Positions 6,762-48,407 of a DNA stretch of 64,000 nt are shown here, piece after piece; position 1 is the first letter of the stretch; each line of letters starts with the position of its first letter. Position numbers and translations under genes: made by a program. Location of the stretch: positions 1-64,000 of the IMG/VR virus record IMGVR_UViG_3300025121_000282. One strand, written 5' to 3'. Below the pieces are notes generated by a model. The model worked only from the letters and a program-made list of their open reading frames with translations, ran no database searches and was not told the DNA's origin.

Positions 6762-7629
6762 AAGATTTGAGTACATATGTGGTAGACTAGACACTATGAA
6801 CTTGACCTTGCCACCTGACCCTGTTGAAGTTGGGTATGATGGCTTGGCTCAGTTGATATCCCAAGCCAGGGCATTTATGTCAGAGTCAGAAAGGTATATG
6901 AGGGAGACACTGAAAAACATACACATAGTCAGTATACTGCTCAATAACAAGAAGTCCCAGTATGAAATTCAGTCAGATTCATTATTAACAGACCACGACA
7001 TTAAACACCTGCCGAACATTCTAGACAGACGTGCTGCAGTTAATCAATTACTAAAACCCCTTATTGCCGAGATAGCAGCACACGAGGCAGAGTTGTTCAG
7101 TAATAACTCTGCCAGGACCATAATCAGGTCAAAAATGAACGACCTAAAGGGTATCATTATGGACCTGAAAACGATGCACCGGTTATTGGTGGATGATAAG
7201 CACTCTGGTGCGTACTATGGGTCAGAACACAAAGATCCCACTCTACCAGGAAAAGTCGTAGTTACTGTCCCAGAAAATGTCTCGGTTGATGACCTGATTT
7301 CGGGCGACGAAACCCCTACAGACTTTGGTCACGCAGTAATCGACTCGCCCGCCTCTGCCGTCACTACAGAAGACATAGACTGCATTGACGTCTCTGTACT
7401 GCTGACATCGGACATCCCTGCCCCGGTCTCTAACAAAAATTCAGATGCATTTGATATCGATGAGATACTTGCAAATGTGTCCAGTCCTTCAGTAGCGAAG
7501 CCAGTGTCCAGTCCCAGCCCCACGGATGACGATAACGTTTTAGCCTTGTTGAATCAGGTGCAAATACCCCCCAAAAAAGACATAGTTGCAGTTGACAGCT
7601 ATGACTTGGCCGGTCTTATAGGCGATTGA
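6751..7629 (+). CDS. coiled-coil protein with acidic tail, possibly a UvsY-like recombination mediator
   Basis: Helical N-terminal two-thirds and a disordered acidic C-terminus. It lies just upstream of the SSB-like, RuvC and RecA genes; the function is positional inference. Confidence 0.35.
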   Translation: MKPERFEYICGRLDTMNLTLPPDPVEVGYDGLAQLISQARAFMSESERYMRETLKNIHIVSILLNNKKSQYEIQSDSLLTDHDIKHLPNILDRRAAVNQLLKPLIAEIAAHEAELFSNNSARTIIRSKMNDLKGIIMDLKTMHRLLVDDKHSGAYYGSEHKDPTLPGKVVVTVPENVSVDDLISGDETPTDFGHAVIDSPASAVTTEDIDCIDVSVLLTSDIPAPVSNKNSDAFDIDEILANVSSPSVAKPVSSPSPTDDDNVLALLNQVQIPPKKDIVAVDSYDLAGLIGD

Positions 7630-7734
7630 GTGTGGTGATTTTTTGTTGTATAGTGGTAGTGCACAAGTGTGGCGTACTGACTTCTGGTGGTACCAGATCT
7701 TTCAGATGGCCTCCCATAAGCCGGAGAAATCAAA

Positions 7735-8526
7735 ATGGGTGCTGGATTCGTAGACTTAGACCTTGAAGATGGCGACAGCAAAGCCAACAAGTCCCTGACA
7801 GGGGGTAGAACTGAGACCTACAAGGGTATCAAGAACTACACCAACAGACTTTCTTTTATTTGGTATAACCAGATACCGGGTACTTCTGAAAAAGACCCTA
7901 TAGAAAGTCGGTATGCCACGGATACACGCCCCAAGTTCAAGGGTGCAAATGTTGCATATAAGAAAGACTCGGGCCTCGGATTCGTAATATACGAGGGGGA
8001 CAACGAGTTTATTAAGAGCGCCATAGGCGATTCCAAGGGTAGAGTAATCACCCTGGTAGTGAAATACTTGACCGACAAGGATGGCAATCTCATCAAGGGT
8101 GCCATTTCGCCTGAGCGCGGGTGGGAAGTTATACCGTGGGTTATGGCAAAGCAGCGCTTTGACGAACTCATGAAGTACCACAAGCAGAGCCCGTTCCAGA
8201 CTCATGACATTCTGGCGTCGTGCGAGAATTCCGAATTCCAGAATTTCAAGTTTATTTCGTGCAATGAGGCTTTGTGGCGCAATCCCAAACTCAGCAAGAA
8301 TATTCTTTCAGCCGCTGCTACTTTTAAAGAGGAAGAACTCTTAAAGCAGTTGGGCACAATTCGGTCGGACCAGTGGATTCTGGAGAAGTTGGGTAAGGGA
8401 CCCGGGTCGTCTGGCAATGTTGCCGACCTCGTAGCAGATGCTATTGACCTGGACGACCTTACCGCGGGCAGCAAGGCAGCTGGTGGCGACGTCCCCACGG
8501 ACTACGACGACCTACTGGCTCCTTGA
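7735..8526 (+). CDS. single-stranded DNA-binding protein-like (gp32-type)
   Basis: Aromatic- and Lys-rich core, strongly acidic C-terminal tail (DYDDLLAP), GGAG ribosome-binding site, GC-richer codons suggesting high expression, and location in the recombination cluster. Confidence 0.55.
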   Translation: MGAGFVDLDLEDGDSKANKSLTGGRTETYKGIKNYTNRLSFIWYNQIPGTSEKDPIESRYATDTRPKFKGANVAYKKDSGLGFVIYEGDNEFIKSAIGDSKGRVITLVVKYLTDKDGNLIKGAISPERGWEVIPWVMAKQRFDELMKYHKQSPFQTHDILASCENSEFQNFKFISCNEALWRNPKLSKNILSAAATFKEEELLKQLGTIRSDQWILEKLGKGPGSSGNVADLVADAIDLDDLTAGSKAAGGDVPTDYDDLLAP

Positions 8527-9173: not shown

Positions 9174-10433
9174 ATGGCTATGACATCCGCTCAGGTTGGC
9201 CTTTCTTTTTTAAAAAAGAAGTATAAAGATGTATATGACACCTCATACACAGAGATTTCCGAACAAAAACAAGTACCACACATACCTACTGGAAGTATAA
9301 TTCTTGACAACCTTATAGGCGGCACCCGGATAGACGGCAACAAGAGAGTGTGTCCCGGGTGGCCCAAGGGCAAAATCGTAGAGTGTTACGGGCATGAGAG
9401 TTCTGGTAAGTCTACAGTAGCCATGCACTACTGTGCCCAGATTTTGGCTGCAGGTGGGTCTGTTTGTTATGTAGACCTGGAGAATGCATTTTCGCATGGG
9501 TACGCGAAAAACATGGGCATCGACATACACAGCGATAGATTTATTTTGTTGCAACCGTATACATTTGAGGACGCATTTAATATTATAGAAGTTATGGTTG
9601 AAGCAAAGGTTGATGCAGTCATCATAGACTCGGTGTCCGGATTGATCCCTAAAGCTGTGTTTGAGGCCGAATTAGGCACCGGTCAACAGGTAGACTCGTT
9701 ACCTAAGTTGATGTCCCAGAATTTGAAAAGGGTGGTCCAACTACAAAGAAAGTGCGGGCTGATTACCACCATTTTCTTTGTGAATCAGGTTCGTGACAAA
9801 ATCAAGACCAGTAAGTACGACACCGGTCCCAATGAGGACACCAGCGGTGGCCGCGCTCTTAAGTTTTATGCAACACTAAGAATAAAGCTTAGGAGAAAAT
9901 CCATCGAATCGGCTATGGTCAGGGACCCCCTTACTGGAGATTCTAGCAAGCAGGCCATATCAAACGTCATCCAGGTGACTGGGGTTAAGAACAAGATAGA
10001 TTCTAGACAAAACCATACCGCACTTATGAACATAAGATACGGACATGGCATCGACAATTATAGGAGCATAATGGACATAGCCATTATGCGCAAGATTATA
10101 ACAAAGTACAACAAAACATACCTTGAGTATGTAGGCAGTTCTCCAGAGGTGTCATTCGGTAGGCCCGCTGACGATGGTACTTGGTCCCCCATGGCTGGCT
10201 CCAAAAATGGCATTGAACAATGTAGAGCGTTCATCATAAATAACCCATCTGTGTTCAAGGATATCCTGTCTAGGGTGATGGAATACTTGTCTACTGGTGT
10301 GCAGGAAATAAGTTCCGAAATGGTGGAAGGTGAAGAGCTTGAGTCCCAAACCGTGGGTGGTCAAGAAGATTTAGAGGCAGATGAAAACGTCCCAGATATT
10401 GCTGATTTGATCGGGGATGATGACATAGAGTAG
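9174..10433 (+). CDS. recA: RecA/UvsX recombinase
   Basis: 'IPTGSIILD', Walker A GHESSGKS, 'IIDSVSGL', 'FVNQVR' and 'GGRALKFYA'. Confidence 0.97.
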   Translation: MAMTSAQVGLSFLKKKYKDVYDTSYTEISEQKQVPHIPTGSIILDNLIGGTRIDGNKRVCPGWPKGKIVECYGHESSGKSTVAMHYCAQILAAGGSVCYVDLENAFSHGYAKNMGIDIHSDRFILLQPYTFEDAFNIIEVMVEAKVDAVIIDSVSGLIPKAVFEAELGTGQQVDSLPKLMSQNLKRVVQLQRKCGLITTIFFVNQVRDKIKTSKYDTGPNEDTSGGRALKFYATLRIKLRRKSIESAMVRDPLTGDSSKQAISNVIQVTGVKNKIDSRQNHTALMNIRYGHGIDNYRSIMDIAIMRKIITKYNKTYLEYVGSSPEVSFGRPADDGTWSPMAGSKNGIEQCRAFIINNPSVFKDILSRVMEYLSTGVQEISSEMVEGEELESQTVGGQEDLEADENVPDIADLIGDDDIE

Positions 10434-10444: not shown

Positions 10445-11608
10445 ATGATTACAATTAGGATCAAGAATTTTCAAGCCATAACTGAGGCCGTACTAGAAGT
10501 ATCTGGTTTTACGACATTAGTAGGAAGGTCTAATGTTGGGAAATCGTCTGTTATACGTGCCATACAGTCTTGCATCACCAACAAGCCTCCCGCTGGATAT
10601 GTGAGAAGAGGAACTACCTCGGCGCAGGTTCAAATCTCAGATGGCAATTTTACTTTTGGGTGGGAAAAAGGCAAATCTGTATCTAAGTATACCGTAAACC
10701 AAACTACGTATGAAAAAACAGGCAGAGACGTACCCGACGAAATAACCAATAACGGGTACAGACAACTAGAAGTAAACGGTCAAAACCTGGATGTGCAAAT
10801 AGGGGCACAATGGTCTCCGCTGTTTATATTGTCCAAATCAGGATTCCTGCTGGCTGATTTGGTGTCTGGCTTTACCGGCTTGGCAGTTCTGATAGACGCC
10901 ATTCAATTGGCAAATGCCGATTTATCTTCTTTTAATAAGGGTCTTAATCTTCTCAAGTCTAATTTAGAGTCTACAACTGGGAGACTCGTAGGCTTTGATG
11001 GCATAGACCCTTTCAGAGATATAGTTGTCGGGATCGAAGGCTTAGTGGAGACAGCCAACGCCAAAAGGTCTGCACTTTCACAACTTAAAGAATACAAAGA
11101 CAAGATTGATGTAGAAGCACTAGTTTGTATACACAACAAAAGTATAAAACTGGTGAACATACCCGATGTAAACATAAGCACAGACCACATAAACATCCTT
11201 GTGGACTTGCACAACAAGTACCACTTGTACCACCGTCTGAGTAACTTTTGTGTTTTAGACTTACCCGAGGTGGACCTTGATGAGTTGTTACAGAAGCAAA
11301 ACGACAGAGACACACTAATTAAGGTAAACAAAGAGTTTGTCAGTCTTTGTTATGTTTCGGATCTGTCCGCTCCCGAGGTACCACATGTGCCAGACGACTT
11401 GTTTGACAAGTCCACCAAACTAGACGGTCTGCGTGTGGTGAATGGCCAATTAAGCTCTTTGGTAACTACAATAAACAGTCTTACTGCTGAACTAAAAGTC
11501 ATAGACAACCAAATAGCCGACACGGATGTCGAATTAGACACACTGTTGGCCTCCATGTCTATGTGCGACGTGTGTGGAACAATAATACATGATCACGCTA
11601 GTAACTAG
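10445..11608 (+). CDS. sbcC: SbcC/Rad50 N-terminal half (Walker A head, coiled coil, terminal zinc hook)
   Basis: 'IRIKNFQA', Walker A GRSNVGKS, Q-loop-like 'QIGAQWSP', coiled coil, ending CDVCG close to the stop. No signature or Walker B motif. Confidence 0.85.
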   Translation: MITIRIKNFQAITEAVLEVSGFTTLVGRSNVGKSSVIRAIQSCITNKPPAGYVRRGTTSAQVQISDGNFTFGWEKGKSVSKYTVNQTTYEKTGRDVPDEITNNGYRQLEVNGQNLDVQIGAQWSPLFILSKSGFLLADLVSGFTGLAVLIDAIQLANADLSSFNKGLNLLKSNLESTTGRLVGFDGIDPFRDIVVGIEGLVETANAKRSALSQLKEYKDKIDVEALVCIHNKSIKLVNIPDVNISTDHINILVDLHNKYHLYHRLSNFCVLDLPEVDLDELLQKQNDRDTLIKVNKEFVSLCYVSDLSAPEVPHVPDDLFDKSTKLDGLRVVNGQLSSLVTTINSLTAELKVIDNQIADTDVELDTLLASMSMCDVCGTIIHDHASN

Positions 11609-13398: not shown

Positions 13399-13682
13399 TG
13401 TCAGAATTAACCGACAGGATACTCAAGCTGCGTGGCCAGAGTAAAACCCTTACCACTAGAAGAGCCACTCTAGTTGGACAGATTGATGCTAGCAAAGACC
13501 GGTTAAGACAGATTATAGACGAGATTAAGGCCAAGGGCTACGAGCCGACAACGCTGGGGGATACTATTAAATTAGAAGAGAGCCAGTTGTCTGTGCAGCT
13601 AGCCACCATTGAGAGTGAGTTGCAAAATGCAAACAGAGAACTCACTCGGATTGAAGAGGCCATAAGTGCAAATCGTCGTTAA
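13398..13682 (+). CDS. small coiled-coil protein
   Basis: 94 aa with a continuous heptad pattern and a central turn (KGYEP); translationally coupled on both sides. Confidence 0.75.
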   Translation: MSELTDRILKLRGQSKTLTTRRATLVGQIDASKDRLRQIIDEIKAKGYEPTTLGDTIKLEESQLSVQLATIESELQNANRELTRIEEAISANRR

Positions 13683-14841
13683 AGCTGCAGATTTATCCAA
13701 CACTCTAGACTTGGCTTCCTTGGTTCAGGAGGACAAGGATGACGCCCCGCTGTACAACTCAGTGGTATTTAAGTACCACAATCCCACTGAGGTACTTGCG
13801 CATGCTGCTATGAAAACCATGGACCGCTTTGGCATATTTGTATTACCCCTTCAAGTAGTCTCCCCCTCCTTTGACCCTGTAGCTATATCCATAGAATCTC
13901 TGAAGAAGGCCATAGACACAACAGACGACGACGAATTTATAACCATTAGCACTGGTACCTCTGTTTCTCTTCAGTTTTTATCTAGTGATGTAAAGTTACC
14001 TATTGTAAATCCTAAGGGATTCCCCAAACTTATTGATGCCGTTCCTAACTCCAGAGTGGGTGACCTGCCTGTTTTAGTTCTAAGACAGGCTTTAGAGTTA
14101 TGTAAGTCATACATAGGCAAAGACCCGTCTAAGCCCAACGCAATGGTGGCCGAGACTAGGAGCAGAAAGGCAGACCCCCAGGTCCCTAACAGTGTTGATG
14201 ACCACGCCATGTTGGCTCTAGACATGGCATGCCAGTCTGTCTTTTCAGACCCTAGTCTGTCTTTTCCATTTAGAATAGAAGCTGCACACATTAGTAAGTG
14301 TATTTCTCTTTTGAAAAAATTGCCCCCCGACTACATGTTGGAAATACACAACAACTCCACATGTATAGGTATAAAATCCAAATTTGGCGTATTTGTGTTT
14401 AGACAGAGTCCAATAGGGTTTTATCCGAGTCTTGTAAGTTACCTAGCGTCCATGCCCAGCACTACAGACCCGGATGCTGACATTCTTCAGATAAACTCAC
14501 AAGATTTAATAAAGGCAATAAAAATTATCACAGTCCCGCTATCTGATACAGAAAACAGAATGTCTGTGTTTGTGGGCTCTGGAGATTCTAAAATTAAGCT
14601 TTCCACCACCACTTCAGGCGAAACCTCGTCTACTGTGGTGTCGTGTACAAGGCCCTCTAACTTGTCTAATGAATTGGTATTTGACATAAACTACTTATAC
14701 CTGAAACAGGCCATCTCTCAGTTGGGCACTCCGGATGTGTTTTTGGTTACTTACAGAGATAAAGTCAAGTCCAACTGGGTACAAGTTGTTGCTACCCTGG
14801 GGACTTCTTGCGGGTCTATAGTTTTTGCCAAGAAACGATGA
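13666..14841 (+). CDS. DNA polymerase sliding clamp (beta/DnaN-like)
   Basis: 391 aa (beta-clamp size). N-terminus 'MQIVVKAADLSNTL' and C-terminal 'FDINYLYLKQAI' resemble DnaN alpha/beta repeats, and clamp-loader genes are nearby. Confidence 0.6.
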   Translation: MQIVVKAADLSNTLDLASLVQEDKDDAPLYNSVVFKYHNPTEVLAHAAMKTMDRFGIFVLPLQVVSPSFDPVAISIESLKKAIDTTDDDEFITISTGTSVSLQFLSSDVKLPIVNPKGFPKLIDAVPNSRVGDLPVLVLRQALELCKSYIGKDPSKPNAMVAETRSRKADPQVPNSVDDHAMLALDMACQSVFSDPSLSFPFRIEAAHISKCISLLKKLPPDYMLEIHNNSTCIGIKSKFGVFVFRQSPIGFYPSLVSYLASMPSTTDPDADILQINSQDLIKAIKIITVPLSDTENRMSVFVGSGDSKIKLSTTTSGETSSTVVSCTRPSNLSNELVFDINYLYLKQAISQLGTPDVFLVTYRDKVKSNWVQVVATLGTSCGSIVFAKKR

Positions 14842-36937: not shown

Positions 36938-36971
36938 TCTCAGCGGTCTTCCAGACCGTTTTTCGTTCATA

Positions 36972-37315: not shown

Positions 37316-40189
37316 ATGACTGATTACCAACAATTGTTAATTGCTGCAGGCATTACTCCGGGTACTATCCATGAACTGTACCTAAAGCACACAGATGTGG
37401 AATTGGCAGCCCAGGCTTCTGTGTTTGACCAGATAGTCCCGGAACATGTGGTGGCTTATTGGCGTAAAAAATGGGGCGTGAAGACTCTAACCTTTCGTCA
37501 GCGTAGAGACCTGGGCAAAGGTATACCAGACATTTCTGGACTCACTAAAGAGAAGTTTCTGGAGTTACATACCAATTTTGGAGACACTCAAATTGCCAAA
37601 ATTTATAACATCAGTAAACAGGGTATAGCCAAGCTTAGACAGCGATATGGCATTGCAGCCGTCAGTTATGAGAAGAGAATTAACCCAACAGACGAACTTA
37701 CTGATTTTCAGAAAGCCGTAATTATTGGAACATCTTTGGGAGATGGCCACATTACTGCGTCAGGATGTTTAAAGTTAGATCACTCTGCGGCTCAAATGAA
37801 TTACATCAAATTCAAACACGGTGTAGTTGCAAATATTTCTAAACGATTGCAATACTTTGAAGGAGATAGATTTAGAGAATACTTGACTTATGGGTTCACT
37901 TTCGTGACCTCTCCACACTCATGGGTAAAGGAGCTTCGTTCTATTTTGTACCCAGATGGAATCAAAGTTTTTCCATTGGATGTAATTGCTAGTTTGAAGC
38001 CTGTCTCTTTAGCTATGTGGTATTTTGACGATGGTCACTATGAAGACTATCCTAGTATTGCGATGGGACTGGCTACTTTGACTGATGTAGACAACGCTAT
38101 TGTTGGATTAGACACAGCCTTTGGTCTTAAAACGTATCTTTCTCCACGATCTTTACCCAATTGCCATGTTCTTCAGTTCAGAGCAGAGTCTAGTGATAGA
38201 CTATTTGAGTTAGTAGCTGAGTTTGCTACTCCAGATGTTGCCCACAAGATCCCTAAAAAATTTTGGCCTATTAAAATCGACTTACCTAAATACAAGGTTA
38301 CCAGAGAGGAGCTTCAGGTATCTAATGACCTGCAGAAGAAGTCTAAGTCTTGGCTCACAATGACTGAGGCAGAACAAGCAGAGCACACAAATAACGTTTT
38401 TCTTGGGTGGAGAGAAGTTGGTTTTCCTTTTCAGACTCCTAAATCAGAAGAGCTTCAAACCATCGTTGGTTTAGAAGACTATCAGATTTTAGACGAAGAT
38501 ACGATCAAAGCTTGCCAAGTTGGGCAAAGTATATGTCAAGCTTTCATGCCCCACATTTGGGGTCAAAAACCCATTGATTCTACTTACTCTATTAAAGAGA
38601 TTTTTGATGATGATCACATGTTTAAAACCGTTATTGTCAAATCTTTAAATGAAAAGAAGTCTGTTACAGCTGGTGCAATTAGAAGTTCTTTGCGTTCATA
38701 TCGCCGTTCAGGCTTATACAATTTTCGCCCAGCAGCTGCCCGTGTGTTGGTAGATAAGTATTGCGTTTCTGGCGGTACTGTATTTGACCCCTGTGCAGGG
38801 TGGGGTGGCAGACTTTTAGGTGTATTGCTATCTGAACAGAGGGTCAATTATGTGGCCTGTGAGCCTAGCTCTGCTACTTTTAATGGTTTAAATGAACTGA
38901 CCAATTGGTTGCAAGAGCACGGGGTAAATGCCAACAATCGCGTTCATTTGCACAACACCCCAATAGAGGACTTCATAGTTCCGGATGGCATAGACCTTAT
39001 TCTGACCTCCCCTCCATACTGGAAAAAAGAAATTTATTCAGACGAACCAACCCAATCTAGTATTAGGTATACTACTTATTCTGACTGGTTGGATCGATTT
39101 TTGAAACCGTTGATTGAGAATTCTTGGAAGAAACTCAATGCTGGTGGCCACATGATTTTGAATGTAGACGATTTTAATTTAAATAAGGAAACTTACAACT
39201 TAGTAGAGGATACTCAACGAATTGCGACTCAAGTTGGGTGCGGCTCTCCAATATCAATTTTTAAATATGACATGGCTTCTTATGGTGTAGAAAATTTTGA
39301 GTCGGTTTTAATATGGCAGAAAGAATCTGGGGTTGTACTTCCATTCCATACTAGACCTAAAGTCAAGTGTCAGCACTGTGGTGGTGATTTTGAAGCTAGA
39401 GCCGGCAAACAATTTTGCTCTACTTTGTGTCGAGTAAAAGGACATCGTCATAATTCTAAATTGCAATCTGACACAGCCAAATTTTGGGCATTGGACGAGT
39501 ATACCCGTTCTATTACAGATAAGTGTAGGTCTTGTGGATTTTATAAACTAAAATCTAATCTTTTGGGTCATGTATGTTCTGACTGTTCTGTTTTACCTCA
39601 TAACCCCAAGAAAATTTGCAAATTTTGTTCAAACCCGTTTCAAGCCGAAAATCTTACTCATCAATACTGTACTGAAGCCTGTTATAAAAAATACCGCAGA
39701 CGTGAATATCGAAAAACAGTTCCTGCTAAAACAACTCGCACAGCCAAATGTCAAATTTGTGAGAACGAATGGGAAGTCCCAGCAACAGGTGGGTGGCCTA
39801 CTAAATGTGATCAGTGTAAGAATCAATCTGATTTAGACGATCGGAAACGAGTTTGTCAGTATAGACATTGCAACACTGAATTTGTAGACACCTCTAAGTT
39901 TCAGGGTATGCATTTTTGTTCACCTGAACATCGAGGTGCCGAAAAACGCATACGTTCAGGTGCAACTGCTGATGTGCCCCCTAAGGATCTCGTTATTGGT
40001 CGTCAACGCAGTAAATGTATGCTGTGTAAACAGCCATTTCTGCTTAATGGAACTAAAAATACTCGTTGTGATGATTGTAAGGTAAAGACCAGAACTAAAC
40101 AGTGTTTGCGGTGTAGCAATCCTTTTATTGATGACAGTGCAAATAACACGTGCAAATTTTGTATTGTTTGCACTAAAATTTCACGTTAA
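37316..40189 (+). CDS. HTH + LAGLIDADG endonuclease + amino-DNA methyltransferase + multiple zinc-finger fusion
   Basis: HTH 'DTQIAKIYNISKQGIAKLR'; LAGLIDADG motifs 'IIGTSLGDG' and 'AMWYFDDG'; MTase 'FDPCAGWGGR' and 'LTSPPY'; about seven CxxC...C(x)xxC motifs at the C-terminus. Confidence 0.85.
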   Translation: MTDYQQLLIAAGITPGTIHELYLKHTDVELAAQASVFDQIVPEHVVAYWRKKWGVKTLTFRQRRDLGKGIPDISGLTKEKFLELHTNFGDTQIAKIYNISKQGIAKLRQRYGIAAVSYEKRINPTDELTDFQKAVIIGTSLGDGHITASGCLKLDHSAAQMNYIKFKHGVVANISKRLQYFEGDRFREYLTYGFTFVTSPHSWVKELRSILYPDGIKVFPLDVIASLKPVSLAMWYFDDGHYEDYPSIAMGLATLTDVDNAIVGLDTAFGLKTYLSPRSLPNCHVLQFRAESSDRLFELVAEFATPDVAHKIPKKFWPIKIDLPKYKVTREELQVSNDLQKKSKSWLTMTEAEQAEHTNNVFLGWREVGFPFQTPKSEELQTIVGLEDYQILDEDTIKACQVGQSICQAFMPHIWGQKPIDSTYSIKEIFDDDHMFKTVIVKSLNEKKSVTAGAIRSSLRSYRRSGLYNFRPAAARVLVDKYCVSGGTVFDPCAGWGGRLLGVLLSEQRVNYVACEPSSATFNGLNELTNWLQEHGVNANNRVHLHNTPIEDFIVPDGIDLILTSPPYWKKEIYSDEPTQSSIRYTTYSDWLDRFLKPLIENSWKKLNAGGHMILNVDDFNLNKETYNLVEDTQRIATQVGCGSPISIFKYDMASYGVENFESVLIWQKESGVVLPFHTRPKVKCQHCGGDFEARAGKQFCSTLCRVKGHRHNSKLQSDTAKFWALDEYTRSITDKCRSCGFYKLKSNLLGHVCSDCSVLPHNPKKICKFCSNPFQAENLTHQYCTEACYKKYRRREYRKTVPAKTTRTAKCQICENEWEVPATGGWPTKCDQCKNQSDLDDRKRVCQYRHCNTEFVDTSKFQGMHFCSPEHRGAEKRIRSGATADVPPKDLVIGRQRSKCMLCKQPFLLNGTKNTRCDDCKVKTRTKQCLRCSNPFIDDSANNTCKFCIVCTKISR

Positions 40190-40685: not shown

Positions 40686-41078
40686 ATGTCTCTTTTGAAT
40701 AAACTGAGATCCATCAGAACAGAGATGGCTCACGCTGCTCAAGAGGTGTATGACTCTTGGGACCAGGATGAAGATGGGGACGACCCAAAATTTGGCTCTG
40801 GTGGTATTTGTGACCGCATTTCTGACGCACTGGCTAGCGTAGTTGTCAACGCCATAGAAGACGTGGAAGTGCACGAGGGTGGGCAAGATGGGGACGACCA
40901 CTCGTGGTTAATCGTTATGAATAATGCCGAGGCCTACTCAGTGGACATACCACCCAGGGTGTACGAGACTGGTGGTGGGTACTCCTGGAAGAAAATTCCG
41001 GATGTTGTGTTCAAGTCTGACGACATTGTAATAGATAACATTCCTATTGGAGATGTTATAAATTTACTTGAGGATTGA
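40686..41078 (+). CDS. acidic hypothetical protein
   Basis: 130-aa ORF coupled to the next gene. Confidence 0.65.
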   Translation: MSLLNKLRSIRTEMAHAAQEVYDSWDQDEDGDDPKFGSGGICDRISDALASVVVNAIEDVEVHEGGQDGDDHSWLIVMNNAEAYSVDIPPRVYETGGGYSWKKIPDVVFKSDDIVIDNIPIGDVINLLED

Positions 41079-43198: not shown

Positions 43199-44839
43199 TT
43201 GTTACACATGGATAACACAGTATACGACAAACTAAAATCAATCCGCTCAAAGACTGATTTAGAGATTAAGCCTTCACAGTTTATAAACAAGACTCTGCCT
43301 GGAACTGACACACCACTAGAAGCTAGAAACTACCAGAAGATAGGTATACTTCATATACTACTAACCCCTAGGATGGTACTTGGAGATGACACTGGACTCG
43401 GAAAGACCCTGAGTAGCATTTTTGCTTTATGTTACATATGGGAACGTGAGTCTCTAAAGACCATAGTTGTTACCACCAAATCGGCTAAGAGACAGTGGTG
43501 GGACGAGTTTTACAAATTCACCAACCAGGGTGACAAGGTTAAAGTTGTAGAGGGTAAGCCACAAGCACGTAGAGAAGTGTATGAGGCGTTTGCCAAAGAT
43601 GACAGTCGAGTCCTTATACTACACTACCACCTGTTGATTCAAGATTATGCCTACCTACTATCAGCCATAAAGGGGATAAGATACGCCCTGGTACTGGACG
43701 AAGTGGCTAATTTAAAAAATCCAAAGTCCAAAACACATAAAATATGCTTTGCTTTAGCAAATAACAAAAATGTAGCCAGGGTAGTCGGACTTACAGCCAC
43801 ATTACTTAAGAACAGATTGGAAGAGGGTTTTGGTGTTTACAGGATAGTTAAGCCTGACGTATTTTCTACTTATTATAAGTTTTTAGACGAGTATTGCATC
43901 GTTAAAATGCAGAAAGTCCCTGGAAACAGACAAGTACCCATAGTGGTTGGCCATTCTAAGATTCAGATTCATAACTTTAGACAGGCCATCGACCCATATT
44001 TTATAGGCAGGCTAAAGTATGATGTTGCCAAAGAGTTGCCTAAGATAATAACAAGAATAATAGACTGTTCTATGTCTAAACAGCAAATAGACCTATATAA
44101 AGAGATATATATAAACAACACACTTACTAAACCCAACGGAGAAGTCCTAGAGCTTACAGACTTGACTCAGAATGGGTATGCCCAAGCTGTGGTAAATAGC
44201 CCCCATTTGCTAGGTTTCACTGTAACTGAAGACCCCAAGTTAGAGACAATACTAGACTTACTAGAGAATGAGCTAAGCGGCGACAAAGTTATTATTTTTA
44301 GTCAGTTACGCACCATGATAGACACCATGGTGCCCCGGTTAACCAAAATAGGAAGGAAGCCATGCAGGATAACCGGGTCTGACAAAGAAAAAGAACGGGA
44401 AGCAGCCAAGAAGGGATTTCAGGGGGATAGGTATGACACTATATGTATTACCACCGCTGGGTCTGAGGCTATTAACTTACAACAAGCATCGGTCATCATA
44501 CTATACGACACCCCCTGGTCCTGGGGTGACTATCTACAGATTCTAGGTAGAGCAGTGAGAATTGGGTCTCCTTATGAGGGCGTTACGGTGTATCATATAG
44601 CAGCCAGTATACCCTCAATTCATAAGATGGGAAAGATTGCGTCTCCATCTAAACGACTCTGTCCTTCGGATTCTGTCCCTACTATTGATTACATCAAGAT
44701 AGCAAGGATCATGTCCAAAAAGAGCTTGATCGAAGCGGCTATGGCTCAGTCTTCTACAGTTTTAGACATAGACAAAGATGATGTTGTGTCGAATAAAGAT
44801 TTGATTCGTCTTGCCAGAGAAGAACTGGCAGCACAATGA
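43199..44839 (+). CDS. SNF2-family SF2 helicase/ATPase
   Basis: 'GDDTGLGKT', 'VLDEV', 'LTAT', 'AGSEAINLQ' and 'QILGRAVRIG'. Confidence 0.92.
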   Translation: MLHMDNTVYDKLKSIRSKTDLEIKPSQFINKTLPGTDTPLEARNYQKIGILHILLTPRMVLGDDTGLGKTLSSIFALCYIWERESLKTIVVTTKSAKRQWWDEFYKFTNQGDKVKVVEGKPQARREVYEAFAKDDSRVLILHYHLLIQDYAYLLSAIKGIRYALVLDEVANLKNPKSKTHKICFALANNKNVARVVGLTATLLKNRLEEGFGVYRIVKPDVFSTYYKFLDEYCIVKMQKVPGNRQVPIVVGHSKIQIHNFRQAIDPYFIGRLKYDVAKELPKIITRIIDCSMSKQQIDLYKEIYINNTLTKPNGEVLELTDLTQNGYAQAVVNSPHLLGFTVTEDPKLETILDLLENELSGDKVIIFSQLRTMIDTMVPRLTKIGRKPCRITGSDKEKEREAAKKGFQGDRYDTICITTAGSEAINLQQASVIILYDTPWSWGDYLQILGRAVRIGSPYEGVTVYHIAASIPSIHKMGKIASPSKRLCPSDSVPTIDYIKIARIMSKKSLIEAAMAQSSTVLDIDKDDVVSNKDLIRLAREELAAQ

Positions 44840-45570
44840 CCAATTTAAACCCTAACTGTACTAAGTGTGGGGGGCGTGGCCACTACAAGACTCATAAAGA
44901 CGAATTGGGCCGCCGTGTCTTTAAAAGATGTGAACTGTGCCACCCTACTACAGCCAGTTTGGCTAATTTGGGCAGGCTGGAAAATGCACCGACTCTGTTG
45001 CAAGACACCACAGAGTCTAACCCTATACTTAAATTTTTAAGTTCTAATTTGGTTATACGTGACACCAACTACTCAGACCAGTACAGCATGTTTGACGTTT
45101 TGCTTAAAAATGCGGTGCTAAAAACCCCTGACTGGGTATACGGGGAAGTTACAGACAGAGAGTTGGTTGATGCTTGGTTGGGTAAAAGTGATTTGCTAGA
45201 GGGCATGGGCATCACCAGGGAACGGCAGTCTAGTACAGATTTGGTAAGAAAACCACCGCTGTTGATTCTAAGATTAGGGTTTATTACATACAAACACAAT
45301 GGGTTATCTGAACAAGTGTCTGATGCTCTGTTATTTAGAAAAATGTACAACAAACCCACTTGGGTTGTACTAGGTATATCAGACGACTTTGACCAGACAC
45401 ACCCCTGCTGGTCTCCTAAAAACGCTGAGATACTCTCCAGCTTTCCTCAAACCACCCTTGCTAAAGGGGCCAAAAAAATACCCAAGCCAAAGCCCGGTGT
45501 TGCTCCAGACACTTCAGGTACATCTGGTATACCTAATGACGGATATTTCTCGGATATTTCGAAGGTTTAA
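44836..45570 (+). CDS. degenerate DnaC/DnaI-like helicase loader
   Basis: N-terminal CTKCGGRG..CELC finger; AAA+-like 'LLILRLG' and 'RKMYNKPTWV'; no intact P-loop; directly upstream of dnaB. Confidence 0.5.
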   Translation: MTNLNPNCTKCGGRGHYKTHKDELGRRVFKRCELCHPTTASLANLGRLENAPTLLQDTTESNPILKFLSSNLVIRDTNYSDQYSMFDVLLKNAVLKTPDWVYGEVTDRELVDAWLGKSDLLEGMGITRERQSSTDLVRKPPLLILRLGFITYKHNGLSEQVSDALLFRKMYNKPTWVVLGISDDFDQTHPCWSPKNAEILSSFPQTTLAKGAKKIPKPKPGVAPDTSGTSGIPNDGYFSDISKV

Positions 45571-45575
45571 CAACA

Positions 45576-48407
45576 ATGTCCGAAGGAATCAATAAAATAC
45601 TACGCAGTTTGCTTGTACTTAATGACAAGCCCGACCAAGAGAATGCAGCTAGGAATTTTGAACAGGTTTTAGTATATAGAATAGACTTTACTGAAGATGA
45701 AGAGAAAGAGATCTTTAATAAAATAAAGAACCACTTTTCTACCTATAGAGAAACCCCTACTATTCAAGACTTGCGTGATGCATTTGAGTTAGAAAAGAAT
45801 CCTGGGGCCATTTTAGTTTTAGATGAAATTTCGAAAGAACCTTGTTACGTCCGCAGTTCTTTTGAAGCTTTGGTTATGGGAGAACTGGAGAAGCAAAGAA
45901 TAGCCAAAATCCATATTTTGGCCAAAGAGTCAGCGCACATAGCATCACATGGCTTAAAAATAGGCAAAGTAGAGCTAAAGGGAGTCAATGATGCCATTCG
46001 TCATTTCACCGGTGGAGCCGACTCTCTACTTGTGATGAATAACGGCGTCAGATTGTCTGGCGATGTGACCCAGGACCATGACGACTTTATAGAAGAAGTT
46101 GAGTACACCCACTCGCACCCAGAAGAAGCTTATGGGTGCCTTACTGGTATAATCCAGGTTGATGAAGGGTGTATGGGGGTAAAACCCTCTGAATTCTGGG
46201 CACACGCTGCATACAGCGGGGGGTTGAAATGTATTAGTGGGGGGTCACGTATTTTTGATAGCAGAGTAGGCATTTTACGTGAAGCCCGAGATGTATACCA
46301 GAATGGTGCCGTAGGTCTGTACACCCACTCATTAAACCACGCCACTGGACAAATCGAATTGGCTGGCGTTAGCCACATACAAGAAAACGGAGTTCGACCT
46401 GTATTTGTACTTGAAAGCTCTCAAGGCCGACAGACAGGGGTCTCAGACAACCACCCATTTCTTACACCTAATGGGTACGTAGAACTTAAGGACCTTAAGA
46501 TTGGAGATTGGATTGCAGTTCCATCTCGTCTTCCAATCCCACTCAGTGCAACCAATCAATTTACTGATGCTCATGCAAAATTGATTGGCTATATGCTGGG
46601 GGGCGGATACATGAACAAAGGTCTGACTTTTGTTACTGTGTCTGACGCCATTAGAACAGATTTTATTGAGCAACTGGTTACTATGGGGTATGTAGAAGGA
46701 AAAGCTACCCCATTACACCCACATTTTCGGTCCACATTTCCCAAAACTAGAGTGCCCACATTACGTATGGGCCATTCTGCTCGTAGTACTAAACGTTATT
46801 GTGCTTCCCCATTGTTACTGTTATTACAATCTTTGGGGCTAATGGGTAAAATTGCGTCCACCAAATTTATTCCAAATCAGCTGTGGTCTATGTCGGATCA
46901 TCAGTTAAAATTACTGGTTGGGGCCATGTGGTCCACTGATGGCCACCTCTCTGTGTGGCGCAATGGTAAGGGTAAAAGGGTACCATCAGTCAAAATTAAG
47001 TACACCACCAAAAGTAGACAACTGGGGGCAGATTTACAATTAGTCTTGCAACGTTTGGGGATTCGTACCTCGTTGGACCGGCACTGGGTTAAATACAAAG
47101 GAGAACGAAGACTGTATTGGACAATAGCAGTTATAGGCCATTCGGCTAAATTCAAATTCTTAACAGACATTGTGGTGATTGGCAAGACTGAAGCTTGTCG
47201 TCTTGCTATTGAAGCGCTTGAGACCCAGCGTGATACATGTGATGACCACATACCTCTGTCTGTATTTAAGAATGTCAAGATTCCACTTCGGGCTGTAAAC
47301 AAAACAGGCAAGACCCCTGTTTACATTGGTTCTATAACCAAGAAGCAAAAAAAAGTGTCTAGAACTGTGGCACTACAATTTGCTTCTGTGCTGAATGACC
47401 CTAGTATCAATACACTGTTGAGTGACCATTTAAACTGGGAACAGGTCCGCTCGATAGTGTGTACTGGTGAGGAGATGACATATGACCTGTCTGTGCCGTC
47501 TAACGAGAACTTTGTTGTAGACGGCTTTGTTACCCACAACACTACTTTTGCTTTAAACTGGGCATACTTTACTGCTGTGTTTCTTAGGAAGAATGCTGAG
47601 TATTTTAGCCTGGAAATGCCATACAAACAGGTTAGACGCATACTAAAGGTGATGCATTCTACTCATTGGAAGTTTACTGATGCACCTTCTGAGGGTGGTC
47701 TCGGGTGGGAACCACTAGAATATAAGAAAGTGCGAGATGGCAAACTAACCCCAATTGAGTTAGAGCGCCTTAAGTACATATCCAAGGACCTTTCAAATCA
47801 AGAGTTACATGGGGCAATACACGTAGTCAAACCCGACCGTGAAGTAACTATAGCAGACCTTAGATTTGTAGCCGAGGCCCAGCATAAGAAGACACCTCTC
47901 TCTGTTATATTTATAGACTACTTGCAATTAGTACAGTCTTCGGATAAGTCTTTAAGGTCAACTACAGAACGGCAAAATGAAGTAGCCCGCGCAGGTAAGC
48001 ACCTCGCCATGAATTTCAATGGTGGTGCAGGGATAGCGGTGATAGGCCTGTGGCAGATCAATAACGAAGGCTACAAACACGCCCAGAAGAAAATGGAAGC
48101 TAAGGAAGAAAAGAAAGGTGGTGTATACGATTTGTCTCACCTTTCTTGGGCAAACGAACTAAAGAATGCCGCCGATTATGTTACATACACCTATGTTGAT
48201 GATGACCTTCGTGCTACAAACGAGGCCATTATAGGCAATATGAAAAACAGAGATAATAGCATCTTTTCTGAAGCTAGAATGAGAGTTGAATGGGGGCAAC
48301 GTAAGTTGGAGTCCCTAATGATCAACTCACCCCTATCTGCCAACAAATCATTTGAAACAGCAGGCGTGAAGGACTTAGACATCGATGTCCTCCTCGGCGG
48401 TCCTTAA
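45576..48407 (+). CDS. dnaB: DnaB-like replicative helicase containing an intein
   Basis: Walker A 'AYSGGLK|TT' interrupted by an intein, 'YFSLEM', 'IFIDYLQL', 'WQIN' and 'MKNRD'. Confidence 0.92.
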   Translation: MSEGINKILRSLLVLNDKPDQENAARNFEQVLVYRIDFTEDEEKEIFNKIKNHFSTYRETPTIQDLRDAFELEKNPGAILVLDEISKEPCYVRSSFEALVMGELEKQRIAKIHILAKESAHIASHGLKIGKVELKGVNDAIRHFTGGADSLLVMNNGVRLSGDVTQDHDDFIEEVEYTHSHPEEAYGCLTGIIQVDEGCMGVKPSEFWAHAAYSGGLKCISGGSRIFDSRVGILREARDVYQNGAVGLYTHSLNHATGQIELAGVSHIQENGVRPVFVLESSQGRQTGVSDNHPFLTPNGYVELKDLKIGDWIAVPSRLPIPLSATNQFTDAHAKLIGYMLGGGYMNKGLTFVTVSDAIRTDFIEQLVTMGYVEGKATPLHPHFRSTFPKTRVPTLRMGHSARSTKRYCASPLLLLLQSLGLMGKIASTKFIPNQLWSMSDHQLKLLVGAMWSTDGHLSVWRNGKGKRVPSVKIKYTTKSRQLGADLQLVLQRLGIRTSLDRHWVKYKGERRLYWTIAVIGHSAKFKFLTDIVVIGKTEACRLAIEALETQRDTCDDHIPLSVFKNVKIPLRAVNKTGKTPVYIGSITKKQKKVSRTVALQFASVLNDPSINTLLSDHLNWEQVRSIVCTGEEMTYDLSVPSNENFVVDGFVTHNTTFALNWAYFTAVFLRKNAEYFSLEMPYKQVRRILKVMHSTHWKFTDAPSEGGLGWEPLEYKKVRDGKLTPIELERLKYISKDLSNQELHGAIHVVKPDREVTIADLRFVAEAQHKKTPLSVIFIDYLQLVQSSDKSLRSTTERQNEVARAGKHLAMNFNGGAGIAVIGLWQINNEGYKHAQKKMEAKEEKKGGVYDLSHLSWANELKNAADYVTYTYVDDDLRATNEAIIGNMKNRDNSIFSEARMRVEWGQRKLESLMINSPLSANKSFETAGVKDLDIDVLLGGP
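46230..47540 (+). mobile_element. intein (437 aa) with LAGLIDADG-type endonuclease in DnaB
   Basis: Starts CISGGS; block B 'VSDNHP'; motifs 'LIGYMLGGG' (degenerate) and 'AMWSTDG'; ends 'GFVTHN' followed by Thr. Confidence 0.95.

What the first reader, a model, noticed from the sequence alone, without database searches (positions are those of the whole stretch)
7300..48407. Shared acidic-hydrophobic C-terminal motif on several replication/recombination proteins
Seen directly: 6751 ORF ends YDLAGLIGD (internal SVDDLISG, FDIDEILA); the SSB-like protein ends DYDDLLAP (internal IDLDDLTAG); RecA ends PDIADLIGDDDIE; DnaB ends DLDIDVLLGGP. The consensus is roughly D-hydrophobic-(D/A)-x-L-hydrophobic-(G/A). 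It resembles in design the T4 clamp-binding tail (S/T)LDFL and SSB C-terminal docking tails. Inference: a phage-specific short linear motif docks these unrelated proteins onto one hub, possibly the phage clamp.
Basis: partly seen in the sequence, partly recalled or inferred. Interest (0 to 1): 0.6.

Follow-up and report, generated by a model that had tools for sequence, protein, structure and literature searches.

The report
Shared SSB-type tail on replication proteins
Several DNA-handling proteins of a 315-kb phage end in the same short acidic-hydrophobic peptide; it is the C-terminal tip known from the phage T4 single-strand-binding protein gp32, and a whole clade of phages also carries it on the protein encoded next to their SSB, so it is probably a common docking tag whose receptor is still unknown.

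Summary
The "SSB-like" protein (7735-8526) is a remote structural relative of T4/RB69 gp32. I built a scoring matrix (PSSM) from the tails of 149 distant homologues, leaving out the window's own proteins. It gives [DE]-h-D-[DNS]-[LM]-[LI]-x-x and scores T4 gp32's own end (DLDDLLNDL) at 18.2 bits. So the motif is the old gp32 C-terminal tip, not something specific to this phage.

With that matrix, the four best C-termini among 499 ORFs of the genome are RecA, the SSB, the 292-aa protein and DnaB.

- **292-aa protein (6751-7629):** strongest support. It is a helical hairpin plus a disordered tail and always lies just upstream of the SSB. All 35 distinct homologues end in the motif, and its tip matches the SSB tip of the same phage.
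- **RecA:** good support in this lineage, looser across the clade.
- **DnaB:** weak. Orthologues keep a different terminal motif.

In T4 only gp32 carries the tip. The receptor is unknown, nothing points to the clamp, and my single co-fold (RecD2 with the SSB tail) gave no answer.

Verdict: a real short linear motif and a new variant of the known SSB-tail docking principle.

The parts
6751..7629 (+). Gene for the 292-aa protein ('p292'). The N-terminal 1-155 is a long helical hairpin and the rest is a disordered tail with five motif copies. It overlaps the upstream ORF by 11 nt and lies directly upstream of the SSB gene.
   Evidence: ORF and translation. AF2 model: pLDDT 94-98 for residues 1-150 and about 45-60 for the tail. 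There are 39 ORF hits (35 distinct proteins) in related loci, typically just upstream of the SSB. No Pfam or PHROG hit.
7282..7305 (+). p292 motif copy 1 (SVDDLISG). It corresponds to the family-wide motif just after the folded domain, D..EL..L[ML].
   Evidence: Family alignment. PSSM 10.5 bits.
7384..7410 (+). p292 motif copy 2 (IDVSVLLTS)
   Evidence: Conserved in L002 while its flanks diverge.
7450..7476 (+). p292 motif copy 3 (FDIDEILAN)
   Evidence: PSSM 13.6 bits, the third best hit in the whole proteome..
7528..7557 (+). p292 motif copy 4 (DDNVLALLNQ)
7600..7626 (+). p292 C-terminal tip (YDLAGLIGD)
   Evidence: 10.3 bits, third best C-terminus of 499 ORFs. All 35 distinct homologues end in the same kind of tip.
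7735..8526 (+). gp32-like single-strand DNA-binding protein, 263 aa: OB-fold core followed by an acidic disordered tail.
   Evidence: AF2 pLDDT 88. Best structural matches are RB69 gp32 (Z 7.4, 156 aa) and T4 gp32 (Z 6.9, 155 aa), with other OB-fold SSBs below. Foldseek 8gme_B probability 0.90. 241 homologues by HMMER. No Pfam or PHROG hit.
8416..8469 (+). First acidic amphipathic segment of the SSB tail (NVADLVAD...IDLDDLTAG). By position it is analogous to the Dda-binding helix of T4 gp32 (residues 248-270).
   Evidence: PSSM 11.4 bits. T4 peptide and contacts from PMC11551737. The analogy is inference.
8500..8523 (+). SSB C-terminal tip (DYDDLLAP)
   Evidence: 13.2 bits. In the family, 127 of 149 homologues have their best hit at 9 bits or more, and 113 of those lie within 6 aa of the end. 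T4 gp32's tip scores 18.2 bits.
9174..10433 (+). RecA/UvsX-type recombinase, 419 aa, with a long acidic tail.
   Evidence: Pfam RecA 1.5e-48. phrog_97 UvsX-like.
10392..10430 (+). RecA tail motif (PDIADLIGDDDIE)
   Evidence: 14.6 bits: best C-terminus of the genome and second best of all 98,025 positions. Kept as PD[IL]ADLIGD in relatives whose RecA is 96% and 85% identical, while the residues after it change. The relative with 37% identical RecA has DDDLFGG.
45576..48407 (+). DnaB-family replicative helicase, 943 aa, interrupted by an intein at about aa 251-655.
   Evidence: Pfam DnaB_C, Intein_splicing and LAGLIDADG_3. phrog_19.
48372..48404 (+). DnaB tail (DLDIDVLLGGP): a possible but unproven copy of the tip.
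   Evidence: 9.3 bits, fourth best C-terminus; tail-shuffle p = 0.013. Orthologue tails differ.
2993..6454 (+). RecD2/Dda-type SF1B helicase (with an intein): a candidate receptor. Its gene runs into the small ORF 6432-6761 and then p292, with overlapping stops and starts.
   Evidence: Pfam. Overlaps. RecD2-p292-SSB order seen across loci. T4 gp32 tail binding to Dda is the precedent. The co-fold gave no answer.
13666..14841 (+). Not tested and no support.
   Evidence: phrog_947 'DNA polymerase processivity factor' 4.8e-10. 38 family members in related loci, none ending in the tip.

Best explanation
The shared tail is the C-terminal tip of gp32-type single-strand DNA-binding proteins. It is a short acidic peptide with hydrophobic residues spaced as in an amphipathic helix (h-x-x-h-h-x-x-h), sitting at or next to the C-terminus of a disordered tail.

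In a large clade of mostly uncultured, often jumbo phages, the same tip is also carried by the protein encoded just upstream of the SSB. That protein (p292) is a helical hairpin with a disordered tail. In the window's own lineage a close copy sits on RecA and a weaker one on DnaB.

Proposed mechanism (inferred). The tip is a docking peptide for one receptor groove within the network of proteins that work on SSB-coated ssDNA. Proteins that carry it therefore compete with, or replace, the SSB tail at that groove. This would couple removal of SSB to loading of the recombinase and the helicase.

My preferred receptor is the SSB core itself, which is where the T4 literature places the acidic end of gp32 when no DNA is bound (about 0.35). 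Other single receptors together get about 0.4: RecD2, the p292 N-domain acting as a UvsY-like mediator, PolA, the clamp loader or the clamp.

Shown: the motif, its family-wide conservation, its identity with the T4 tip, and its co-variation between SSB and p292. Inferred: that it binds anything, and what it binds.
For: 1. SSB identity. The AF2 model (pLDDT 88) matches RB69 and T4 gp32 best (Z 7.4 and 6.9, about 155 aa, clearly above the next hit at 4.5).
2. Tip conservation. 241 homologues were found, and nearly all listed ones end in the motif. The PSSM was built without any window protein.
3. T4 gp32 ends DLDDLLNDL and scores 18.2 bits. It is the only strong C-terminal hit in the T4 proteome.
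4. That PSSM picks RecA, SSB, p292 and DnaB as the top four C-termini of 499 ORFs. The RecA tail is the second best of all positions.
5. p292 family. All 35 distinct homologues end in the tip. Half score 9 bits or more, with a mean of 8.6 against 2.3 for shuffled tails.
6. SSB and p292 tips of the same phage resemble each other more than permuted pairs do (13.6 against 9.7 +/- 1.2, p = 0.0008). In L047 both end SYDDLLK.
7. Conservation forms islands inside the disordered region. The RecA and SSB tips are kept in relatives with 85-96% identical RecA while their flanks change.
8. A looser core pattern is enriched in RecA tails across the clade (18 of 65 against 3.1 expected). It is absent from RuvC, PD-(D/E)XK nuclease, RecD2, clamp-loader and Toprim tails.
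9. In other members of the clade the tip also sits on a DNA methylase, an SbcD-like nuclease, an RNase H and a metallopeptidase. This is how a portable tag would behave.
10. Literature. The gp32 C-terminal domain binds UvsX, UvsY, Dda and gp59 (PMC3016280). It can also occupy gp32's own cleft or core (PMC11551737; PMC12424635).
Against: - No receptor was identified. The one co-fold allowed gave no answer.
- The AF2 monomer models do not dock the tips confidently; tail pLDDT is about 55-65.
- The motif carries little information. The number of C-termini at 9 bits or more (4) is not far above chance (about 1.7).
- With the strict PSSM, RecA tails across the clade are not enriched: 15% reach 9 bits and 8% have p <= 0.05.
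- The looser pattern that is enriched was chosen after I had seen the data.
- DnaB orthologues keep a different terminal motif...MF[SQ][IV]. The two orthologues at 40% identity show no clear copy.
- The co-variation test is confounded by shared ancestry of the phages.
- In T4 the tip is not shared with UvsX, gp41, gp59 or UvsY, so the T4 literature says nothing about sharing.
Confidence: 0.6

Rival explanations
1. Clamp tag. The motif is a clamp-binding peptide like T4 [ST]LDFL[FY] or bacterial QL[SD]LF. It tethers SSB, p292, RecA and DnaB to the phage's beta-type sliding clamp (13666-14841).
For: - The motif resembles the T4 clamp tag, and its hydrophobic spacing h-x-x-h-h is that of PIP boxes (what the sequence shows, plus established knowledge).
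- The phage encodes a clamp and a clamp loader.
- In relatives the motif occurs on varied DNA enzymes (methylase, RNase H, nuclease), as clamp tags do.
- No clamp in the clade carries the tip itself.
Against: - PolA and the ligase, the usual clamp clients, do not end in it.
- T4 proteins with the true clamp tag score low with the PSSM: the best hit anywhere in each protein is 5.4 for gp43, 3.2 for gp55 and 2.8 for gp33.
- The aromatic residue at position 4 of the T4 tag and the Gln of the bacterial tag are absent.
- As far as I know (my own knowledge, not checked here), the T4 gp32 tip is not described as binding the clamp.
- It was not tested by co-folding.
Confidence: 0.1
2. T7-like arrangement. 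As with T7 gp2.5 and gp4, the acidic tails of the SSB and the replicative helicase both dock on a basic patch of the family-A DNA polymerase (49575-52352). The RecA and p292 copies use or compete for the same patch.
For: - The replicative polymerase here is family A (Pfam DNA_pol_A 4.5e-53).
- In T7 the SSB tail competes with ssDNA for the SSB groove and anchors to the polymerase's front basic patch. A gp4-tail peptide occupies the same site in PDB 6P7E (bioRxiv 10.1101/2025.03.07.642097).
Against: - The terminal aromatic residue that defines the T7 tails is missing.
- The same tip occurs in T4, whose polymerase is family B, so a receptor conserved from T4 to this clade cannot be PolA.
- It gives no role to RecA or p292.
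- Not tested.
Confidence: 0.1
3. Only the SSB and p292 share a functional motif. The RecA and DnaB tails of this phage look alike through the composition of acidic disordered tails plus chance, and each serves its own family-specific purpose: RecA self-regulation, and DnaB contact with its loader.
For: - The strict PSSM shows no family-wide enrichment in RecA tails.
- DnaB orthologues have their own conserved end...MF[SQ][IV], and an upstream G[LI]S[IL]D motif.
- DnaB scores only 9.3 bits, and about 1.7 C-termini at 9 bits or more are expected by chance.
- T4 UvsX and gp41 lack the tip.
Against: - The RecA tail is the best C-terminus and the second best position in the proteome, with about 0.05 expected by chance.
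- It is kept in relatives with 85-96% identical RecA while neighbouring residues change.
- The looser core is about six-fold enriched in RecA tails of the clade.
- The four top C-termini all belong to proteins that act on ssDNA.
Confidence: 0.3
4. No trans-acting hub. Each tail folds back on the DNA-binding surface of its own protein as an ssDNA mimic and self-inhibitor. The similarity only reflects what any such mimic needs, which is acidic and hydrophobic residues.
For: - The gp32 and T7 gp2.5 tails compete with ssDNA for their own clefts.
- The C-terminal tail of E. coli RecA is self-inhibitory (established knowledge).
- SSB, RecA and DnaB all bind ssDNA.
Against: - p292 has no recognisable DNA-binding domain, yet its tip is conserved in all 35 distinct homologues and tracks the SSB tip of the same phage.
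- The tip also sits on a methylase, an RNase H and a metallopeptidase in relatives.
- A specific, register-conserved helix at the extreme C-terminus argues for a defined pocket.
Confidence: 0.15

Closest known systems
Acidic C-terminal domain ('A-domain') of phage T4 gp32
   Same: - The core fold is the same.
- The tail has the same layout: a first acidic amphipathic segment, a Gly/Ser/Ala-rich linker, then the terminal tip.
- The tip is the same. T4 DLDDLLNDL scores 18.2 bits with the PSSM of the window's SSB family.
- The T4 domain is the known contact site for UvsX, UvsY, Dda and gp59, and can fold back on gp32 itself.
   Different: - In T4 only gp32 carries the tip. Here a second conserved protein (p292) carries it across the clade, and RecA, and perhaps DnaB, carry it in this lineage.
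- There is no Pfam match to the gp32 family.
- The N-terminus is acidic rather than the basic cooperativity motif of gp32.
- The partner of the extreme tip is not defined even in T4. The solved Dda contact uses residues 248-270.
T7 gp2.5 and gp4 acidic C-terminal tails docking on T7 DNA polymerase
   Same: It is the one well-studied case in which an SSB and a replicative helicase of a phage carry look-alike acidic tails that use the same receptor site. The SSB tail there also competes with ssDNA for its own groove. A family-A polymerase is present in both phages.
   Different: - The T7 tails depend on a terminal aromatic residue, whereas these end in aliphatic residues, often followed by Gly, Ala or Asp.
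- A different SSB family is involved.
- RecA and the p292 protein have no T7 counterpart.
- Binding was not tested here.
Bacterial SSB C-terminal tip (SSB-Ct, ...DDDIPF) as interaction hub
   Same: It is an acidic run followed by hydrophobic residues at the extreme C-terminus of a disordered SSB tail, and it is used to gather many DNA enzymes (established knowledge). In the window's SSB family, 113 of 127 tips lie within 6 residues of the end.
   Different: The polarity may be reversed. In bacteria only the SSB has the tip and the enzymes have pockets for it. Here other proteins, and in relatives several enzymes, carry the tip themselves. There is no Pro-Phe end.
T4 clamp-binding tail [ST]LDFL[FY] (gp43, gp55, gp33)
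   Same: It is a portable C-terminal peptide found on unrelated proteins, with L-D at positions 2-3 and hydrophobic residues at positions 5-6.
   Different: The aromatic residue at position 4 is replaced by Asp, Asn or Gly. T4 carriers of the clamp tag score 2.8-5.4 bits (best hit anywhere in each protein) against 18.2 for gp32. The polymerase here lacks the motif.
T4 UvsY recombination mediator (as a model for p292)
   Same: - It is a small helical protein acting between the SSB and the recombinase, and T4 UvsY binds the gp32 A-domain and UvsX.
- The p292 N-domain aligns with the whole UvsY chain 4zwq_A (Z 10.3, 129 of 136 residues).
- Two Atlas clusters near p292 include UvsY-annotated members.
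   Different: - There is no sequence relationship: Pfam has no hit, hhalign probability is 0.3%, and a profile search of the T4 proteome gives E = 2.6.
- The structural score is tied with many unrelated helical hairpins.
- UvsY has no disordered tail and no tip.

Membership tests
gp32-type phage SSB (for ORF 7735-8526) | OB-fold core with the gp32 topology | tested here: met
   RB69 gp32 Z 7.4 (156 aa, rmsd 3.6) and T4 gp32 Z 6.9 (155 aa), next hit 4.5, with other SSB OB folds below. Foldseek 8gme_B probability 0.90, E 4.7e-3. This is a fold-level match only.
gp32-type phage SSB (for ORF 7735-8526) | Sequence match to the curated gp32 family model | tested here: not met
   No Pfam or PHROG family at E <= 0.01. 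A profile of 60 homologues finds no PDB sequence.
gp32-type phage SSB (for ORF 7735-8526) | Acidic disordered C-terminal domain ending in the D-L-D-D-L-L type tip | tested here: met
   The window tail scores 13.2 bits and T4 gp32 18.2 bits with the same PSSM. Tail pLDDT is 55-65.
gp32-type phage SSB (for ORF 7735-8526) | Basic N-terminal cooperativity segment (KRKST 'LAST' motif) | tested here: not met
   The N-terminus reads as acidic (FVDLDLEDGD within the first 15 residues). The T4 motif is as described in PMC12893549.
gp32-type phage SSB (for ORF 7735-8526) | Binds ssDNA cooperatively | not testable with these tools
   Needs biochemistry.
Short linear docking motif (SLiM) | Lies in an intrinsically disordered region | tested here: met
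   Low pLDDT in the tails of the SSB and p292. The RecA and DnaB motifs lie beyond their Pfam domains.
Short linear docking motif (SLiM) | Conserved as an island while flanks diverge, across orthologues | tested here: met
   p292: 86% identity in the motifs against 54% in the rest of the disordered region, and 35 of 35 homologues have the tip. SSB family. RecA: only within relatives whose RecA is at least 85% identical, and loosely beyond that. DnaB: not met.
Short linear docking motif (SLiM) | Binds a defined pocket on a partner | tested here: inconclusive
   One co-fold (RecD2 with the SSB tail) returned 'no answer'. No other partner could be tried.
Sliding-clamp binding tag (T4 [ST]LDFL[FY], bacterial QL[SD]LF) | Sequence fits the tag consensus | tested here: not met
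   No Gln at position 1 and no aromatic residue at position 4. T4 tag carriers score 2.8-5.4 bits with the tip PSSM (best hit anywhere in each protein) against 18.2 for gp32.
Sliding-clamp binding tag (T4 [ST]LDFL[FY], bacterial QL[SD]LF) | Present on the replicative polymerase and other clamp clients | tested here: not met
   The PolA and ligase C-termini lack it. PolA's best hit is an N-terminal segment at 10.5 bits.
Sliding-clamp binding tag (T4 [ST]LDFL[FY], bacterial QL[SD]LF) | Peptide binds the clamp's hydrophobic pocket | not tested
T7-type shared acidic tails (gp2.5 and gp4) | Tail ends in an essential aromatic residue | tested here: not met
   The tails end in ...LLAP...LIGD...DDDIE and ...LLGGP.
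UvsY mediator family (for p292) | Match to Pfam PF11056 or to T4 UvsY by sequence | tested here: not met
   None of the 28 family members hits it at E <= 1. hhalign probability is 0.3%. A profile search against the T4 ORFs gives UvsY E = 2.6, rank 6.
UvsY mediator family (for p292) | UvsY-like helical fold | tested here: inconclusive
   4zwq_A Z 10.3 over 129 of 136 residues, but rank 10 among helical hairpins with Z 9-11.5. Atlas clusters with 12-15% UvsY annotation.

The most novel reading that the evidence does not exclude
This phage clade runs the SSB interaction network with reversed polarity. Instead of enzymes having pockets for the SSB tail, the proteins that must take over SSB-coated ssDNA carry a copy of the SSB's own C-terminal tip. 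These are a conserved mediator-like protein encoded next to the SSB, the recombinase and the replicative helicase; in relatives a nuclease, an RNase H and a methylase carry it too. The tip binds the SSB core, or the mediator's helical domain. Each carrier can then displace the SSB tail, loosen the SSB from DNA locally, and load itself.
Probability: 0.25. Interest if true: 0.75.

Novelty: new variant of a known kind. Interest (0 to 1): 0.55.

Why it matters
How recombinases and helicases get onto ssDNA that is already coated by SSB is a central problem in replication and recombination. T4 solves it with separate mediator proteins that contact the gp32 tail. The partner of the extreme gp32 tip is still undefined.

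Three things here would be useful if they hold:
- A large, unannotated gp32-like SSB family keeps that tip.
- A conserved neighbour gene carries the same tip and tracks it from phage to phage.
- In this lineage the recombinase also bears a copy, and the helicase possibly a weaker one.

Together they give a natural experiment. The receptor can be fished out with four related peptides, and the result would also say what the T4 tip does. It would also assign a role to two protein families that today have no Pfam or PHROG annotation.

Tried and rejected
**Co-fold.** RecD2 (the intein-free orthologue from L002, alignment A5) with SSB tail residues 219-263 gave 'no answer': ipSAE 0.01-0.02 and the controls were not run. 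This is not evidence for or against binding. I chose RecD2 because of the T4 gp32-Dda structure and the overlapping RecD2/p292 genes. The clamp, SSB core, PolA, clamp loader and p292 N-domain could not be tried because only one job is allowed.

**Searches for close relatives that found nothing:**
- Megablast against known phages.
- Single-protein scans of viral contigs with the SSB and with RecA.
- A word search with the SSB found only the protein itself.
- The SSB alignment was too divergent for a pattern scan.
- Three informative contigs had no DNA on file.

**PDB sequence searches.** Profiles of the SSB and p292 families found nothing.

**p292 fold.** Foldseek against PDB and the viral library gave only generic helical hairpins. 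UvsY homology was rejected at the sequence level and is kept only as a structural lead.

**RecA with the strict PSSM.** There is no family-wide enrichment in RecA tails. I therefore do not claim that RecA tails carry the tip throughout the clade.

**Discarded look-alikes:**
- The SbcC-like protein 10445-11608 scores 11.3 bits 17 residues from its end, but the hit lies in a coiled coil next to a CxxC hook, and the L005 orthologue lacks it.
- Tails of orf94 homologues score above shuffles, but they look like ordinary coiled-coil helices.
- The ribonucleotide reductase small subunit of L005 ends DFSDIWDD. This is the known R2 tail for R1, a different system.

Full report
**Setting**

The window is the first 64 kb of a single-contig virus record of 314,886 bp. 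All large genes in it lie on the + strand.

It encodes a replication and recombination module:
- NAD-dependent ligase, and a RecD2 helicase carrying an intein.
- A 292-aa protein and a 263-aa protein, neither with a family hit.
- A RuvC-like resolvase.
- RecA, SbcC-like and SbcD-like proteins.
- A PD-(D/E)XK nuclease, a Toprim primase domain and a clamp-loader ATPase.
- A beta-type clamp (phrog_947).
- Further on, an SNF2 helicase, DnaB with an intein, and a primase zinc ribbon.
- A family-A DNA polymerase.

No known phage is close at the DNA level. Near-identical and 85% identical relatives exist only as metagenome contigs.

**The observation**

The 292-aa protein, here called p292, has five copies rather than three.

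That test is circular, because the pattern was derived from those four tails.

**What the SSB-like protein is**

A full HMMER search found 241 homologues. An AF2 model built on 60 of them (pLDDT 88) matches RB69 and T4 gp32 best. The scores are Z 7.4 and 6.9 over about 155 residues, the next hit is at 4.5, and the rest of the list is full of OB-fold SSBs. Foldseek agrees.

Nearly all homologues end in an acidic-hydrophobic tip. Of 149 homologues, 127 have their best hit at 9 bits or more, and 113 of those lie within 6 residues of the end.

**A non-circular motif model**

I built a PSSM by expectation-maximisation from the last 30 residues of the 149 homologues, excluding the window's own proteins. 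It gives [DE]-[VFILY]-D-[DNS]-[LM]-[LI]-[DGS]-[DGS].

T4 gp32, fetched from the T4 record, ends DLDDLLNDL and scores 18.2 bits. So the motif is the gp32 C-terminal tip. It is ancient, not specific to this phage.

In the complete T4 proteome gp32 is the only strong C-terminal hit; the next is 10.0, on a small hypothetical protein. UvsX, gp41, gp59 and UvsY do not end in it.

**Scanning this genome**

Over all 98,025 positions, the RecA tail is the second best hit (14.6 bits) and a p292 copy the third (13.6).

Restricted to the last 15 residues, the top four of 499 ORFs are:

| Rank | Protein | Bits |
|---|---|---|
| 1 | RecA | 14.6 |
| 2 | SSB | 13.2 |
| 3 | p292 | 10.3 |
| 4 | DnaB | 9.3 |
| 5 | orf130 (40686-41078) | 7.9 |

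The motif is short, so the count alone is weak. About 1.7 C-termini at 9 bits or more are expected by chance. Only RecA is significant on its own, with about 0.05 expected. Relatives therefore have to decide.

**Relatives**

A RecA alignment retrieved 80 viral contigs, and other look-ups added L001-L007. In 43 loci a gp32-like SSB is present, in most of them about 1 kb upstream of RecA.

p292:
- Homologues (39 ORF hits, 35 distinct proteins) typically lie just upstream of the SSB, and RecD2 homologues are found in 37 of the loci.
- All 35 distinct p292 homologues end in the tip.
- Half score 9 bits or more, with a mean of 8.6 against 2.3 for composition-matched shuffles.
- The family alignment shows a conserved helical N-domain, a motif just after it, a mid-tail ..FL motif, and the tip.

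Co-variation:
- The SSB and p292 tips of the same phage resemble each other more than permuted pairs do (13.6 against 9.7 +/- 1.2, p = 0.0008).
- In L047 both end SYDDLLK. In L017, L016 and L021 both have the D-F-x-x-h-L-x-N-h ending.
- Shared ancestry inflates this test, so I treat it as supportive rather than proof.

Islands of conservation: between the window and a close relative (RecA 96% identical), p292 is 86% identical in the N-domain, 86% in the motif segments and 54% in the rest of the disordered region.

**RecA and DnaB**

RecA:
- The tip is kept as PD[IL]ADLIGD in relatives whose RecA is 96% and 85% identical, while the residues after it change.
- The syntenic relative L005 (37% identity) has DDDLFGG.
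- Across the clade the strict PSSM is not enriched in RecA tails: 15% reach 9 bits.
- A looser core, acid-x-h-h-x-x-h, is enriched: 18 of 65 against 3.1 expected. It is absent from the tails of five other module proteins. I chose that pattern after seeing the data.

DnaB:
- The two orthologues at 40% identity show no clear copy.
- Four jumbo relatives keep a different end...MF[SQ][IV], and an upstream G[LI]S[IL]D motif.
- The DnaB tail of this phage is therefore a possible copy, not a demonstrated one.

**A portable tag?**

In other clade members strong C-terminal tips sit on a DNA methylase, an SbcD-like nuclease, an RNase H and, in two different phages, a PF18894 metallopeptidase. The clamps and RecD2 helicases never carry it.

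**What p292 is**

The N-domain (residues 1-155, pLDDT 94-98) is a long helical hairpin. PDB and viral Foldseek searches give only generic hairpins.

T4 UvsY aligns over its whole length (Z 10.3, 129 of 136 residues), but it ranks tenth among many tied helical proteins. Two Atlas clusters near p292 contain UvsY-annotated members. Sequence tests are negative. A UvsY-like mediator role is a lead only.

**Mechanism**

- From the literature: the gp32 C-terminal domain contacts UvsX, UvsY, Dda and gp59 (PMC3016280). Dda binds the helix at residues 248-270 (PMC11551737). The acidic end can occupy gp32's own cleft or core.
- Shown here: the motif, its conservation, and its sharing between proteins.
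- Inferred: the tip is a docking helix for one receptor, and the carriers compete with the SSB tail there. This would link SSB removal to loading of RecA and DnaB.
- My preferred receptor is the SSB core, at about 0.35. It is the one candidate present in every tip-bearing phage, T4 included, and it would explain why varied DNA enzymes acquire the tag.
- RecD2, the p292 N-domain, PolA (the T7 precedent), the clamp loader and the clamp remain open.

**What failed**

The one co-fold allowed, RecD2 with the SSB tail, gave no answer and counts neither way. The clamp idea has no support but was not tested directly.

**Verdict**

This is a real short linear motif. Sharing is firmly established for the SSB and p292, probable for RecA in this lineage, and uncertain for DnaB. 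It is a new variant of the known SSB-tail docking principle, and the receptor is unknown.

Noticed in passing
window 56357-57910 (+): A 517-aa protein with WGR, PARP regulatory and PARP catalytic domains (Pfam E 5.8e-10, 3.2e-8, 3.8e-11). It lies in a stretch of raised G+C (0.52 against about 0.44). A PARP-like enzyme is unusual in a phage.
   Followed up: partly
window 33000-37000: G+C-rich island (0.52-0.565 against about 0.43 on either side) holding four + strand ORFs (33516-34454, 34619-35239, 35251-36036, 36062-36937) with no Pfam family. A 259-aa ORF on the opposite strand (36197-36976) overlaps the last one, so the coding strand there is uncertain. It may be foreign DNA.
   Followed up: partly
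window 2993-6454, 24999-28199, 45576-48407: Three genes carry inteins with LAGLIDADG homing-endonuclease domains: RecD2, an unidentified 1066-aa protein, and DnaB. The close relative L002 (RecA 96% identical) has an intein-free RecD2 of 744 aa, so that intein is recent or mobile.
   Followed up: partly
window 37316-40189 (+): One 957-aa ORF combines a LAGLIDADG_2 endonuclease domain (aa 134-296) with a weak N6/N4 DNA methylase match (aa 559-672).
   Followed up: no
window 16307-17044 and 48385-48984: The primase seems to be split. The Toprim/DnaG catalytic part and the CHC2 zinc ribbon are separate genes 31 kb apart, and the zinc ribbon gene overlaps the end of dnaB.
   Followed up: no
window 40686-41078 (+): An unannotated 130-aa protein ends GDVINLLED. 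At 7.9 bits it is the fifth-ranked C-terminus with the tip PSSM and may be a further weak carrier.
   Followed up: no
window 44836-45570 (+): A 244-aa protein directly upstream of dnaB (6-nt gap). It has an N-terminal CxxC...CxxC zinc ribbon and a disordered tail ending GYFSDISKV. By position it is a candidate helicase loader. Its tail does not score with the PSSM.
   Followed up: partly
L090, L092, L093, L094 (DnaB genes of four jumbo relatives): DnaB orthologues share their own conserved C-terminal tail: G[LI]S[IL]D about 20 residues from the end, and a terminal ...MF[SQ][IV]. This looks like a separate, undescribed helicase tail motif.
   Followed up: partly
window 6432-6761 (+): A 109-aa ORF overlaps both the end of RecD2 and the start of p292. 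It is conserved in L002 but absent in L005, where the RecD2 gene overlaps the p292 gene directly.
   Followed up: no
genome G000:C1 66000-234000 (outside the window): The middle of the genome is filled with short ORFs (mean 120-200 aa) on frequently alternating strands. Both ends have long genes in single-strand blocks. My simple ORF caller may be unreliable in that region.
   Followed up: no
L010 16751-17953; L079 8768-9862; L084 18292-18738; L024 18658-19149; L051 18279-18797: In related phages the SSB-type tip sits at the C-terminus of a DNA methylase, an SbcD-like phosphoesterase, an RNase H and, twice, a PF18894 metallopeptidase.
   Followed up: partly
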